A stretch of 63,857 bases of DNA, filler included, from Reticulomyxa filosa (lineage: Eukaryota > Protista > Foraminifera), in assembly GCA_000512085.1 (NCBI GenBank). It is 21 parts of 21 records of this genome, joined end to end, with 100 filler letters (N's around TTAATTAATTAA, not from the genome) between each part and the next. Parts side by side here need not be neighbours in the genome. Positions count along the whole stretch, not along the records: positions 57,086 to 58,573 come from ASPP01022977.1; 20 more parts are not named here. One strand, written 5' to 3'. This document shows positions 55,508 to 58,573 of this stretch, one piece after another. The stretch's first letter is position 1. Each line of letters starts with the position of its first letter. The notes under the pieces were generated by a model. The model was not told the DNA's origin and searched no databases. It saw only the letters and a program-made list of their open reading frames with translations. The translations under genes were made by a program, and so were the position numbers.

Positions 55508-57614
55508 NNNNNNNNNNNNNNNNNNNNNNNNNNNNNNNNNNNNNNNNNNNNTTAATTAATTAANNNNNNNNNNNNNNNNNNNNNNNNNNNNNNNNNNNNN
55601 NNNNNNNACAAACTCAAAGTCGGTGCTTGGTACGCTGAGCCTGGCAAATGCGTTTTTCATTGCATCACCTTGTTTGCTTTGTTTGTTCATCTGTTTTTAA
55701 ATGACCACTTGAACGGAACTCAGTTGAAACAAACTAACTTTCTTGAAACTGTGTTAGGATTAATTTTATAATAATAGGCTGTTTTCTTTTTTTTTTTGCT
55801 TTGTATATGCACAATTATTATTTGTTCGCAGATTATTCAAATTAAATTGTTGTCTTTCATTGAACATACTCTTATCTAGAGTTTGAATAAAAAACTGCTT
55901 TCATTAAATTCTATTCTCTTTCTATTTCTGGGGAAAATAACCTTTTGCGGACGTAATGATCATCCAAAATTTCATACATCACTTTTTTTCTTTTTTTTTT
56001 AAAGAGAAGACAATAAAATTTTTTTATTCTTAAAAATACATTTGTGTTGCGATAGAAGTATCAGATGATTTTTTTTCTAATCAAAGTGTTAGAAATATGG
56101 ATATATAATAATATATAAATGTGGGAAAACATTAAAATAAAACTCAAGTTGAAACTGTGCTTATACAAACGTGTTAGTAATATTGCACGACAAAAAAAAA
56201 CAAATAGAATTATTAAAAAAATAATCATTCATTCAAAAGTTTGTGTCAATTTTTTTGTTCTCACTTGTATTCTACTGACACAACTTTTCTCAATATAATT
56301 ATTAGTTCGAGCTATTCGTCCTATAATAATAATTATAACGATACAATATAAGTTATTATTATTTGACATTAATTTGTAAAAAAAATATACAGTTAAGTAT
56401 TGTTAAAACAATTACTTCAATTATTTGGTATTACTGTTCTATCAGTGGCAATAATACCAAGTATAATGCCACCATCACAAATATTCATGATCTGTAGAAT
56501 ATTTTACAACAGGACAATCAACAACAAAAAAATGTCCGTTTCATAATATAGACAAAGTATCTGACGATTTCCAATGCACAATATATTGCTGTCTCTGTTA
56601 AAACATTCCTCGATTTTTCTCAGACAAGTCTTTTTTGGTTTGATTTTTCAGTTTCGCCAAAGACTTATAGTTTGTTTTTGTGTTTGTTTTTTTTAACAGT
56701 CCTTTACTTTGAATCGATCCAAATATAGTCGCAGCATCTTGTGCTAGTTGAGATGCGGATGCATTGTTGAACTTGGAAACTGTATTTCGATTGCTTAAAA
56801 GTGACTTTCAATTGGACAATATCTACCGCTGCAAAAGTGAGTGCAGTTGATGGTGGGAGACACAATAACTTGGCAAAGTCATTATCTTCGTTTGGATCAA
56901 TTGGAAGATTGCAGACAACAAATTTCTGCTCTTTGATGATTTCATGCAAGTCCCCATGGAATGATAGACTAAACACATCACTGAGNNNNNNNNNNNNNNN
57001 NNNNNNNNNNNNNNNNNNNNNNNNNNNNNTTAATTAATTAANNNNNNNNNNNNNNNNNNNNNNNNNNNNNNNNNNNNNNNNNNNNTAGTTCCTTGGCTTG
57101 CAAGAAATTAAAAAAATGCTCGCTTATGCTTTGAAGACAGCCAAAACGATCCCATGATGACAAATAAAAAAAAAAAAAAGTGAACCAGGGCATATTTCAG
57201 TGGGCTTTTGGAATCGACAGTATTTTTTATTGTCTATTTGATTTTGCTATGCTATTGAGTTGATGATTATACTTTCCTTTTTCCTTTTTGGTGTTTGATT
57301 TTCAAAAAAAGGTTAAAAACCACTGACTTTTAGTATTTAATGGAAAAACTTAACACTTGTTCATCATATAGCATTTTTTTTACGTTTTGTACAAACAGCT
57401 TATGAATTCTTTGCAATTGTGTTTGTGCCTTTTTTTTTTTAGTCCATTTGCGATTCAATATGGACATTGCAAAAAAAAGTAGTTTTCAATTTTAAAACAT
57501 AAAAAAAAGAGTCAATAAATTTGGTATTGAAAATACATACATTTTTTAAAAGCTGAATTTATAAACTCTAGTCCAATTTTTTTAAAATTTGTCTTTTTTT
57601 GCAATTTCACAAGA

Positions 57615-57735
57615 TGCACATCAAAAAAAAAACAAGGTATAAAAATCCGGAAAGAGACGAAAGCAATCCATCAAAGAAGGCCTTTGATGAGTTTGTTTGA
57701 CTTCTTTCCATCACAGATACATTGTTTGACATGCA
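57615..57735 (-). promoter_or_regulatory. Candidate eukaryotic SECIS element in the deiodinase 3'UTR
   Basis: mRNA fold by hand: helix I AAACAA-U-GUAU/AUAC-C-UUGUUU; core GUGAU (57714-57710)/GGAU (57648-57645); helix II GGAAAGA/UCUUUCC; AAA 11 nt after the core; apical stem CAUCAAAG/CUUUGAUG. Confidence 0.75.
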
Positions 57736-57769
57736 AGATCCAGAGAATGCAAGAAAAGAAAGCTTCTTT

Positions 57770-58573
57770 CTAATAATAATAATAAGAAGAAGAAGAAGAA
57801 AAAGTGCGTGTTAAGTGCAAAGACAAATCGCTGAGATCATAATATCCAGGCGATTTGGGTTGCAAAATGAATTGAATGACATCATTTTGAAAAACGAAGG
57901 CACGCAGAGGCCACGCAGCATACGTGGTTTGAAAGAGATTGTCCATCGTGTCAACATAAACAGGTATGTTGAGTTTGTATTGTCGCGTAAGGGACAGCGC
58001 AACATGACAGCGTTGTTGCAAGGTTTGATGCTGTTTGATGCGCAATTGCGACGCGGTGCGAATTGGCCATTCGTCATCGGCATGTGCTTCCAAAATGTAC
58101 ACACAAAAGAAGTCGCATGCATGGCCAAAGGCATCCGCCAAGGCGTTCAAATACCCGACGTTGACACGAAATGGGGGTCAGGTCACACTCCCACTGATTA
58201 CGACTTTGGCTTTTTCATTGTTATCGCTTCCAAGAATGCGACGCAAAGTCGTCTCTTGTCCGTGGCACGTCATCAATGTGACATCTTGCCAGGGGTCCCC
58301 TACGTGCAATGCTCCCACACATGCTCGGTTGTACTTGCGATAAAACGTCGCATTTGCTATTTCGACATCGTTTGGATATAAGCTTTCAGCCGCCCGCAAA
58401 TAGTCCATCGCATATGCAACTTCCTCTTCGCTTTCGTATCCAAACTCTTTTACCACTTTGCTTTGCCATTTCGTAATGCTACACGGTACGTATACGTCAC
58501 TCTTCGCCTTCGTCGTTGCCGTTGCCGTTGTCCATAACGACGTAGCACTATTATTATTATTACTATTATTATT
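57770..58573 (-). CDS. Iodothyronine deiodinase-like selenoprotein (Sec UGA at 58178-58180), 5' truncated
   Basis: ORFs 58178-58456 and 57770-58150 are in the same frame with one TGA between them: VVISGSVT-U-PPF...DFFCVYILEAHADDEW...HQTLQQR...VDTMDN...YAAWPLRAFV, matching deiodinase GSCT-U-PPF, YIEEAH..DGW, DTM.N..Y.A..ER. Confidence 0.93.

What the first reader, a model, noticed from the sequence alone, without database searches (positions are those of the whole stretch)
57770..58573. Hidden selenoprotein: deiodinase-like enzyme recoded through an in-frame UGA in a probable foraminiferan
Seen: the ORF track splits this gene in two, but both halves are in frame and the only interruption is TGA (58178-58180) in GGG AGT GTG ACC TGA CCC CCA TTT = GSVT-U-PPF. 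Known: vertebrate deiodinases have catalytic Sec in GSCT-U-PPF, followed by YIEEAH..DGW, H...R and DTM.N..Y; all have counterparts here. Inference: this protist has Sec insertion and a thioredoxin-fold dehalogenase, although it has no thyroid, so the substrate may be iodinated or brominated organics. The visible upstream region (VKEFGY...YPNDVEI...FYRKYNRA) is soluble and unlike the vertebrate membrane anchor, suggesting a distinct subfamily; the true N-terminus is off-contig.
Basis: partly seen in the sequence, partly recalled or inferred. Interest (0 to 1): 0.88.

Follow-up and report, generated by a model that had tools for sequence, protein, structure and literature searches.

The report
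Hidden foraminiferal deiodinase-like selenoprotein gene
This is a real selenocysteine-encoding gene of the deiodinase enzyme family in a Reticulomyxa-like protist, with its own decoding signal (SECIS) in the 3' UTR; such genes are already known in other protists, but this clade has an unusual long soluble N-terminus and is wrongly modelled in the public Reticulomyxa annotation.

Summary
A minus-strand ORF (58573..57770, cut at its 5' end by the piece edge) is interrupted only by TGA at 58180-58178, in GSVT-TGA-PPF. The half after the TGA matches Pfam T4_deiodinase (E=5e-20), starting right after the Sec column. TGA sits at this column in 76 of 79 readable metagenomic relatives, in 13 further fetched loci, and in two Reticulomyxa filosa genomic paralogs whose public gene models splice the active site out. 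A form-2 SECIS lies 55 nt after the TAG stop (57630-57727, minus): GUGA/GA quartet, 8-bp helix II, AAA 12 nt after the quartet, long mini-stem. A covariance model built only from six relatives finds it (E=5.6e-4). Helix II covaries in those relatives (6 of 9 pairs with two-sided changes). The deiodinase proton-relay residues are all present; the vertebrate proximal and distal Cys and the membrane anchor are not. Full-length relatives are about 420-430 aa, with a soluble N-terminal extension of about 240 aa. Deiodinase-like selenoproteins are known in Dictyostelium and bacteria, so this is a new member of a known kind. Substrate, reads and Sec machinery could not be tested.

The parts
58181..58573 (-). 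CDS part 1: the last 131 codons before the Sec codon, cut at the 5' end by the piece edge. It holds a low-complexity linker (NNNSNNNN..), a helical module (VKEFGY..LYPNDVEI..FYRKYNR), then the N-terminal beta-hairpin and beta1 strand of the Prx/Trx-like fold, ending in VVISGSVT.
   Evidence: Translation. 52-56% identity to R. filosa P0044 and P0046. A family profile of the last 70 aa hits the N-terminal modules of peroxiredoxins, Dio3 and Dio2. The AF2 model of relative L089 shows helices at the homologous segment.
58178..58180 (-). In-frame TGA = selenocysteine codon, the catalytic residue in G-S-V-T-U-P-P-F.
   Evidence: TGA is at the same column in 76 of 79 readable loci, in L001-L006, in L087-L093 and in R. 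filosa L094 and L095.
57773..58177 (-). CDS part 2: 135 codons after Sec, forming the deiodinase catalytic core. It has the relay and stacking residues Y27, E30, H32, W37 and H50, the DTMDN motif, the K108 clamp position and a low-complexity tail SSSSSYYYY.
   Evidence: Pfam PF00837 E=5.4e-20. PDB 4tr3 Dio3 E=2.5e-10 and 9h48 Dio2 E=9e-10. Column conservation in 53 loci.
57770..57772 (-). True stop codon, TAG.
57630..57727 (-). Form-2 SECIS element in the 3' UTR. Helix I is AAACAA.GUAU / AUAC.UUGUUU. The 5' quartet GUGA is at 57714-57711. Helix II is UGGAAAGA (57710-57703) paired with UCUUUCCG (57655-57648). The unpaired AAA is at 57698-57696, 12 nt after the quartet. The mini-helix CAUCAAAG-GCCUU-CUUUGAUG is at 57689-57669. 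The 3' GA is at 57647-57646.
   Evidence: MFE -25.9 kcal/mol, z=-3.1. Covariance models built without the window find it as the top hit: R1 E=0.038, R2 25.3 bits, E=5.6e-4. Helix II covariation in relatives is shown.
57086..57629 (-). Rest of the 3' UTR or intergenic DNA: AT-rich with homopolymer runs. No convincing ORF, tRNA or RNA family was found.

Best explanation
The piece carries the 3' two-thirds of a nuclear gene for a selenocysteine-containing enzyme of the iodothyronine-deiodinase family (a peroxiredoxin-like thioredoxin fold). The organism is a foraminiferan close to, or identical with, Reticulomyxa filosa. The UGA at 58180-58178 is decoded as Sec because the mRNA has a form-2 SECIS element 55 nt after the TAG stop and 466 nt after the UGA. 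That element would recruit SBP2, eEFSec and Sec-tRNA (inferred from the standard eukaryotic mechanism). The product (about 420-430 aa in full-length relatives) is soluble: a tentatively PH-like N-terminal module, helical modules, then the catalytic domain with Sec at the peroxidatic position. By analogy with Dio2 and Dio3, the selenolate abstracts a halogen as X+ from an aromatic substrate, and the conserved Ser/Thr/Tyr/Glu/His/His relay protonates the ring. The Se-X or Se-OH intermediate would be reduced by an external thiol, because the vertebrate proximal and distal cysteines are absent. What is shown: the gene structure, the conserved Sec codon, the SECIS and the conserved catalytic residues. 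What is inferred: Sec insertion itself, and the chemistry. I put reductive dehalogenation at about 45% and a peroxidase or other thiol-redox role at about 45%. The substrate is unknown.
For: The TGA, its context and the single open frame are confirmed. PF00837 scores 72 bits, starting at the column after Sec. The C-half matches Dio3 and Dio2 structures. TGA sits at the same column in 76 of 79 metagenome loci spanning GC 31-75%, with 100-400 open codons upstream, in L001-L006 and L087-L093, and in two R. filosa genomic paralogs. Four independent assemblies of one orthologue (L001-L004) all carry TGA. The SECIS has a canonical layout with z=-3.1, a shared [A/G]UGA-UG[G/A]AA..UU[C/U]CG-GAU core in eight lineages, and helix II covariation of 92.6% paired against 73.5% shuffled, 6 of 9 pairs changed on both sides, with slid registers collapsing. 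Models that exclude the window find it at E=0.038 and 5.6e-4. GUGA cores, long mini-stems and AAA bulges are documented in real SECIS elements (PMC3473315; PMC2375036). Ser-3, Tyr27, Glu30, His32, Asp35, Trp37, Arg56 and Asp76 are invariant in 53 loci and map onto the Dio proton relay (PMC11592359). The profile of the upstream 70 aa hits Prx, Trx and Dio N-terminal modules.
Against: There is no read-level or RNA evidence for this organism, because no sequencing run was listed. Sec machinery cannot be checked from a 1.5-kb piece. Rfam's SECIS model gives no hit, but it also misses canonical-looking SECIS elements in distant relatives, so this is uninformative. The AA(R) motif is missing from the homologous elements of L001, L005, L087 and L094, so the clade's SECIS is not fully canonical. 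The first quartet base is G, not A. The 5' end of the gene is missing. No biochemical data exist for any member of this clade.
Confidence: 0.9

Rival explanations
1. The gene is a pseudogene, or the TGA is a sequencing or assembly error for a Cys (TGT/TGC) or Trp (TGG) codon.
For: Only one assembly of this piece is available, and no reads could be laid.
Against: The same codon at the same column is TGA in 76 of 79 readable relatives and in 13 further loci, including four independent assemblies of one orthologue and two R. filosa genomic paralogs. No Cys form was seen at the column. Both halves are conserved at 52-70% amino-acid identity with no other stop or frameshift. A conserved SECIS lies downstream.
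Confidence: 0.03
2. UGA is read as an ordinary amino acid (Cys or Trp), by a variant genetic code or near-cognate read-through, without selenocysteine.
For: Some protists reassign UGA, and Sec machinery was not checked here.
Against: TGA occurs only at the catalytic column in the 266 visible codons, and likewise in the relatives' ORFs. Distant family members use TGA as their terminal stop. A SECIS-type K-turn element with covarying helix II is conserved in the 3' UTRs, which has no role under plain reassignment. The family is a known Sec family (PMC2375036).
Confidence: 0.03
3. Translation stops at the UGA, and only the N-terminal protein is made. The downstream deiodinase half would then be a separate or untranslated relic.
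For: Gene callers annotate two ORFs. Sec decoding is usually inefficient, so some truncated product is expected anyway.
Against: The downstream half has no conserved start: relatives' callers begin at an internal Met 12 codons in, while PPFRVNV..LN before it is conserved. The upstream half ends in the beta-strand of the same Prx-like fold. Catalytic residues downstream are invariant, which requires that this half is translated.
Confidence: 0.04

Closest known systems
Dictyostelium discoideum deiodinase-like selenoprotein (Lobanov et al. 2007, PMC2375036; dio3 of Singh et al. 2014)
   Same: It is a protist deiodinase-family selenoprotein in an organism without thyroid hormone. Its SECIS is type II with an unusually long mini-stem, an unpaired AAA and a UGUA shortly before the core. 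The window has AAUGUAUCU-GUGA, an AAA and an 8-bp mini-stem.
   Different: The window's SECIS core is GUGA. Its clade has a conserved soluble N-terminal extension of about 240 aa. Sequence relatedness to the Dictyostelium protein was not measured here, because no reference sequence was available.
Vertebrate iodothyronine deiodinases Dio1-3 (PDB 4tr3, 9h48; Pfam PF00837)
   Same: It shares the Prx-like Trx fold and has Sec in G-S-x-T-U-P-P-F. It keeps the Ser/Thr/Tyr/Glu/His/His relay, the Trp stacking residue, the loop-D insertion, DTMxN and a basic residue at the Arg275/Lys241 clamp position.
   Different: There is no N-terminal transmembrane anchor. The proximal Cys is Val, and the column is essentially never Cys in 53 loci. 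The distal Cys (Dio3 Cys239) is Ile, and Dio3 Glu259 is Leu. Identity is only about 30%. The substrate is unlikely to be a thyronine.
Reticulomyxa filosa RFI_36155 (P0044) and annotated 'deiodinase' (P0046), assembly GCA_000512085.1
   Same: They belong to the same clade (99/99 support) and share the N-terminal extension. Identity is 52-64%. Their genomic DNA has TGA at the same column.
   Different: The public models remove the SVT-U-PPFRVNV..LNA segment as a false intron. P0044 also translates its own SECIS as a C-terminal tail. The window's gene is a different paralogue or orthologue and is not in the protein database.
Bacterial deiodinase-like selenoproteins
   Same: They have the same TGA column and the GS[YWF]T-U-PPFRR motif, on long high-GC contigs such as L066 (179 kb).
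   Different: They are decoded by a bacterial SECIS inside the CDS, not by a 3' UTR K-turn element. They lack the eukaryotic N-terminal extension. Identity is 33-41%.

Membership tests
Iodothyronine deiodinase family (Pfam PF00837 T4_deiodinase) | Profile match above the curated threshold | tested here: met
   The C-half scores 72.1 bits against a cut-off of 27, E=5.4e-20, profile positions 115-235 of 237. The N-half alone gives no Pfam hit, but its family profile hits Prx and Dio N-terminal modules weakly.
Iodothyronine deiodinase family (Pfam PF00837 T4_deiodinase) | Catalytic Sec (or Cys) in G-S-x-T-[U/C]-P-P-F at the start of helix alpha1 | tested here: met
   The window reads GSVT-TGA-PPF. 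Ser-3 is invariant in 53 of 53 loci and position -1 is always Thr or Ser.
Iodothyronine deiodinase family (Pfam PF00837 T4_deiodinase) | Proton relay and loop-D edge residues (Dio2 Ser127, Thr129, Tyr157, Glu160, His162, Trp167, His182) | tested here: met
   Window S-3, T-1, Y27, E30, H32, W37 and H50 align to them (residue list from PMC11592359). All are invariant in 53 loci except H50, which is His in 34 of 53.
Iodothyronine deiodinase family (Pfam PF00837 T4_deiodinase) | Vertebrate-type N-terminal transmembrane anchor | tested here: not met
   The maximum 19-aa Kyte-Doolittle mean is 0.55-1.39 in the window halves and in four full-length N-termini of relatives, below the level typical of a membrane helix. 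The AF2 model shows soluble modules.
Iodothyronine deiodinase family (Pfam PF00837 T4_deiodinase) | Proximal (GSCTU) and distal (Dio3 Cys239) resolving cysteines | tested here: not met
   Position -2 is Val, and Tyr, Val, Ile, Trp and Leu lead the counts across 53 loci. The Cys239 column is Ile. A different Cys (C57) is conserved in the close clade.
Iodothyronine deiodinase family (Pfam PF00837 T4_deiodinase) | Reductive deiodination of iodothyronines | not testable with these tools
   This needs an enzyme assay.
Eukaryotic SECIS-dependent selenoprotein gene | In-frame UGA aligned with Sec in homologues, with conserved coding sequence on both sides | tested here: met
Eukaryotic SECIS-dependent selenoprotein gene | 3' UTR SECIS: helix I, internal loop, (A/G)UGA..GA sheared quartet, helix II, unpaired AA(R) about 10-13 nt after the quartet, apical loop or mini-helix | tested here: met
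   All of these elements are present at 57630-57727. Models that exclude the window find it. Helix II covaries in relatives. Caveats: the core is GUGA (a documented variant), Rfam gives no hit, and the AA(R) is missing in several relatives.
Eukaryotic SECIS-dependent selenoprotein gene | Sec machinery in the genome (tRNA-Sec, eEFSec, SBP2, PSTK, SepSecS, SPS2) | not testable with these tools
   Only a 1.5-kb piece is available. It holds no tRNA. The searchable literature has nothing on foraminiferal Sec usage.
Eukaryotic SECIS-dependent selenoprotein gene | Selenium actually incorporated (75Se labelling or mass spectrometry) | not testable with these tools
   This needs an experiment.

The most novel reading that the evidence does not exclude
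Foraminifera (Reticulomyxa and relatives) use selenocysteine and carry a multi-paralogue, lineage-specific subfamily of soluble deiodinase-type selenoenzymes. These would combine a PH-like module, helical modules and a Prx-like Sec domain without resolving cysteines. They would be decoded by a clade-specific SECIS ([A/G]UGA-UGGAAA..UUUCCG-GAU) that often lacks the canonical apical AA(R). The enzyme would dehalogenate non-thyronine halogenated aromatics, or act in signalling, and so inform the ancestral function of deiodinases.
Probability: 0.25. Interest if true: 0.6.

Novelty: new member of a known kind. Interest (0 to 1): 0.4.

Why it matters
It adds Foraminifera to the lineages with evidence of selenocysteine use; I found no paper on this in the searchable library. 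It shows that the two public Reticulomyxa filosa gene models of this family are wrong, with the active site spliced out and, in one case, the SECIS translated as protein. It defines a soluble, multi-domain branch of the deiodinase family that keeps the full catalytic relay but lacks the vertebrate resolving cysteines and membrane anchor. That branch is useful for asking what deiodinases did before thyroid hormones existed. The clade's SECIS (GUGA or AUGA core, AA(R) often absent) is a natural test set for the sequence requirements of SECIS recognition. The basic phenomenon, a protist deiodinase-like selenoprotein, has been known since 2007.

Tried and rejected
- **Rfam:** cmscan on the piece found no SECIS at E<=10, nor on relatives. 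I rejected this as evidence, because canonical-looking SECIS elements in L014, L015 and L035 are missed too.
- **First SECIS scan:** my first regex scan required AA and perfect first pairs, and so missed the relatives.
- **Reads:** The look-up of sequencing runs listed no run, so read laying could not be used and the TGA could not be checked in reads or RNA.
- **Alignments:** MAFFT alignments A3 and A4 misaligned L005 and L087, so A5 was used as the seed.
- **Model coverage:** model R1 did not hit the R. filosa paralogues. L094's element was found by eye (first pair C.U), and L095's is cut by the contig end.
- **N-terminal region:** Pfam on the N-terminal half and on full N-terminal extensions found nothing. 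The protein atlas gave no usable hit. Foldseek against the PDB gave only weak PH-domain matches.
- **Organism names:** The listing of cluster members returned none.
- **Clamp residue:** I first thought the Dio3 Arg275 clamp was absent. After reading PMC11592359 (Arg275 = Dio2 Lys241 in GG[R/K]GP), the window has Lys at that column.

Full report
**Observation.** The only real sequence is the piece 57086-58573. On the minus strand a single reading frame runs from the piece edge (58573) to TAG at 57772-57770. It is interrupted only by TGA at 58180-58178, in GGG AGT GTG ACC TGA CCC CCA TTT, which reads GSVT-stop-PPF. A mechanical ORF list splits it into two pieces.

**What the two halves are.** The 135 codons after the TGA match Pfam T4_deiodinase at 72 bits (E=5.4e-20). 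The match covers profile positions 115-235 of 237, so it starts at the column right after the catalytic Sec. They also align to the crystal structures of mouse Dio3 (4tr3, E=2.5e-10) and Dio2 (9h48, E=9e-10). The 131 codons before the TGA have no Pfam hit on their own. A profile of the last 70 residues from 37 family members hits 21 solved structures. Twenty of these are peroxiredoxin or thioredoxin-fold proteins, matched at their N-terminal hairpin plus the strand leading to the catalytic residue; Dio3 (18-56) and Dio2 (34-60) are among them. The TGA therefore lies at the catalytic position inside one Prx-like domain, not between two genes.

**Is the TGA a Sec codon? Comparative evidence.**
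- A protein search with the C-half found 23 relatives. Most are about 115 aa and sit on contigs of 1-1.6 kb, the signature of gene callers restarting after an unrecognised UGA.
- In six fetched loci the upstream ORF ends exactly 37 nt before the called fragment. The junction codon is TGA each time, with conserved flanks: VIISGSVT-TGA-PPFRVNV, and VIMAVSIS-TGA-PPLRRNV in the 42%-identical L006.
- A scan of metagenome contigs returned 80 loci. In 76 of the 79 that could be read, the codon before query residue 1 is TGA, with 20-400 open codons upstream. These loci span GC 31-75% and contigs up to 180 kb. The three exceptions are alignment offsets; L061, for instance, has the stop one codon away.
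- Seven more loci all have TGA.
- Four independent assemblies of one orthologue (L001-L004) agree.
- No Cys form was seen at the column. A nonsense mutation or a sequencing error can be excluded for practical purposes.

**The SECIS element.**
- *Location and layout.* A eukaryotic selenoprotein needs a SECIS in its 3' UTR. The minimum-free-energy fold of 57630-57728 (minus strand), starting 55 nt after the TAG, shows the form-2 layout (-25.9 kcal/mol, z=-3.1; coordinates):
  - Helix I is AAACAA.GUAU / AUAC.UUGUUU.
  - An internal loop has GUGA (57714-57711) opposite GAUU (57647-57644), the sheared G.A quartet.
  - An 8-bp helix II is UGGAAAGA / UCUUUCCG.
  - An AAA lies 12 nt after the quartet (57698-57696).
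  - An 8-bp mini-helix is capped by GCCUU.
- *Conservation.* The same core, [A/G]UGA-UG[G/A]AA..UU[C/U]CG-GAU, lies 55-254 nt after the stop codon in seven other lineages: L001-4, L005, L009/L092, L010, L087/88, L093 and R. filosa L094.
- *Covariation.* On a model-made alignment of the six non-window lineages, helix II is 92.6% paired against 73.5% in shuffles (0 of 500 reach it). Six of nine pairs have changes on both sides (1 of 500). Every slid register drops to 28-67% paired.
- *Independent detection.* Covariance models built without the window find the window's element as the best hit in the piece. R1 (four lineages) gives E=0.038. R2 (six lineages) gives 25.3 bits and E=5.6e-4, with the runner-up at E=0.17.
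- *Rfam.* Rfam's SECIS model is silent on the window. It is equally silent on textbook-looking elements in distant relatives such as L014, L015 and L035, so that negative carries no weight.
- *Literature.* GUGA_AA cores are documented in green algae and sponges (PMC3473315). The Dictyostelium deiodinase-like gene has a type II SECIS with an extremely long mini-stem, an unpaired AAA and a UGUA before the core (PMC2375036). All of these resemble the window's element.
- *Unexplained point.* The AA(R) motif at canonical spacing is present in the window and L093 (borderline in L010) but absent in L001, L005, L087 and L094.

**Organism and public annotation.** A search with a full-length N-terminal region found two named proteins from Reticulomyxa filosa: RFI_36155 (480 aa) and an annotated 'deiodinase' (270 aa). 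Both models jump over the active site, reading ..VVISG|NVFGDV.. and ..REQDS|FNFVF... Their genomic DNA (ASPP01038724.1 and ASPP01010533.1) reads VVISGSVT-TGA-PPFRVNV and VLISGSIT-TGA-PPFRVNV in an uninterrupted frame. The predictor therefore invented introns to avoid the TGA. The tail of RFI_36155 is in fact its SECIS read as protein.

The window's halves are 52-64% identical to these proteins. In a maximum-likelihood tree the window falls in a 99/99 clade containing both R. filosa paralogues, and groups (87/99) with L087, L008 and the R. filosa 'deiodinase'. 'Probable foraminiferan' is thus supported. Whether the piece is R. filosa itself (a third paralogue) or a relative cannot be decided here.

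**Architecture.** Four relatives reach a start of the form MSALE../MAALE.., 285-305 residues before the Sec. The protein is therefore about 420-430 aa, and the window lacks about 170 N-terminal codons. The extension has no Pfam family and no atlas relative.

An AF2 model of L089's extension (mean pLDDT 70) shows four parts:
- A beta module capped by a helix (residues 14-92, pLDDT 80-92).
- A helical hairpin (136-169).
- A helical bundle (189-233). This is the VKEFGY..LFPND segment present in the window.
- A low-confidence hairpin leading into the Trx fold.

The only high-probability Foldseek matches are PH-like domains, at weak E-values, so 'PH-like' is tentative. No 19-residue window approaches transmembrane hydrophobicity.

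**Mechanism.** I used the residue list from the Dio2/Dio3 structure paper (PMC11592359) and the alignments.
- The window keeps the whole proposed proton relay (Ser-3, Thr-1, Tyr27, Glu30, His32, His50), the stacking Trp37, and a Lys at the Arg275/Lys241 clamp position.
- Ser-3, Tyr27, Glu30, His32, Asp35, Trp37, Arg56 and Asp76 are invariant in 53 TGA-bearing loci.
- Three vertebrate features are not kept. The proximal Cys is Val, and that column is essentially never Cys in the family. The distal Cys239 is Ile. Glu259 is Leu.

The most likely chemistry is therefore that of a deiodinase. The selenolate takes the halogen, the relay protonates the ring, and the enzyme is regenerated by an external thiol or by the clade-conserved Cys57. 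The family's Prx-like ancestry and the lack of any thyronine in such organisms leave a peroxidase or thiol-redox role about equally likely. This step is inference, and no tool here can test it.

**Novelty.** Deiodinase-homologue selenoproteins in thyroid-less protists were reported for Dictyostelium in 2007 and verified there by 75Se labelling of the selenoproteome. A developmental phenotype of its knockout was published in 2014 (the reference is seen; its content is from my own knowledge). The bacterial-looking high-GC contigs with the same TGA fit bacterial deiodinase-like selenoproteins described previously (my own knowledge). I found no paper linking Foraminifera or Reticulomyxa with selenoproteins in the searchable library. 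That library is incomplete. The finding is a solid new member of a known kind, with a clade-specific architecture and SECIS flavour.

**Not done.** The following could not be run:
- A read or cDNA check, because no run was listed.
- A search for the Sec machinery.
- Any tool call on a protein read through the stop, since the tools do not accept this. The two halves were searched separately. They were joined with X only inside the tree script.

Noticed in passing
L094:3580 (ASPP01038724.1) and L095:3008 (ASPP01010533.1): The public Reticulomyxa filosa gene models RFI_36155 and 'deiodinase' splice out the Sec-containing active-site segment as a false intron. RFI_36155's C-terminal tail (..YKMTEIHLCGVFPEPFKKK) is its SECIS (AUGA at L094:4054) translated as protein, and an insert of about 25 aa near MNGRINFDF looks like a retained intron.
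   Followed up: yes
L089:12-869 (also L007, L008, L090); off-contig for the window: The family has a conserved soluble N-terminal extension of about 240 aa with no Pfam family. The AF2 model shows a beta module plus helix (residues 14-92) whose only high-probability Foldseek matches are PH-like domains (SSRP1/Pob3, ARAP3, REC114, Osh3, FERM F3), followed by helical modules.
   Followed up: partly
L001:1275-1314, L005:1472-1505, L087:1262-1333, L094:4054-4088: The homologous SECIS elements of these relatives keep the UGA..GA quartet and a covarying helix II, but have no AA(R) at the canonical 10-13 nt spacing. The A-U pairs 4-6 of helix II (GGAAA/UUUCC) are almost invariant instead, which suggests a clade-specific recognition feature.
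   Followed up: partly
L024 and L027 (metagenome contigs, GC 31-34%): A variant active site, GSYT-TGA-LPFC, has a Cys three residues after the Sec (U-x-x-C). This resembles a thioredoxin-like redox motif and is unlike the PPF of all other members.
   Followed up: no
L033, L036-L041, L048, L062, L066 (179-kb contig), L067, L069, L086 and others: Long, high-GC (56-75%) contigs, evidently bacterial, carry GS[YWF]T-TGA-PPFRR at the same column. Sec is therefore the rule across bacterial members of the family as well, and no Cys form appeared among the 79 loci.
   Followed up: no
L010, near nt 743: This close relative shows a frame shift inside the catalytic domain: the frame changes within ..DRCLMAKSLT... 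It may be an assembly error or an intron. Its SECIS (AUGA at 1074) is intact.
   Followed up: no
L089 and L090, 3' ends: No SECIS-like core is visible in the 178 nt and 107 nt of 3' UTR held for these two relatives, and L090 ends in an A-run. Either the element lies further downstream or the contigs are cut short.
   Followed up: no
window 57773-57811 and 58550-58573 (minus strand): There are low-complexity coding runs specific to the window's gene: a C-terminal tail SSSSSYYYY and an asparagine-rich linker NNNSNNNN. The linker sits in the position of the acidic, variable linker of relatives.
   Followed up: no
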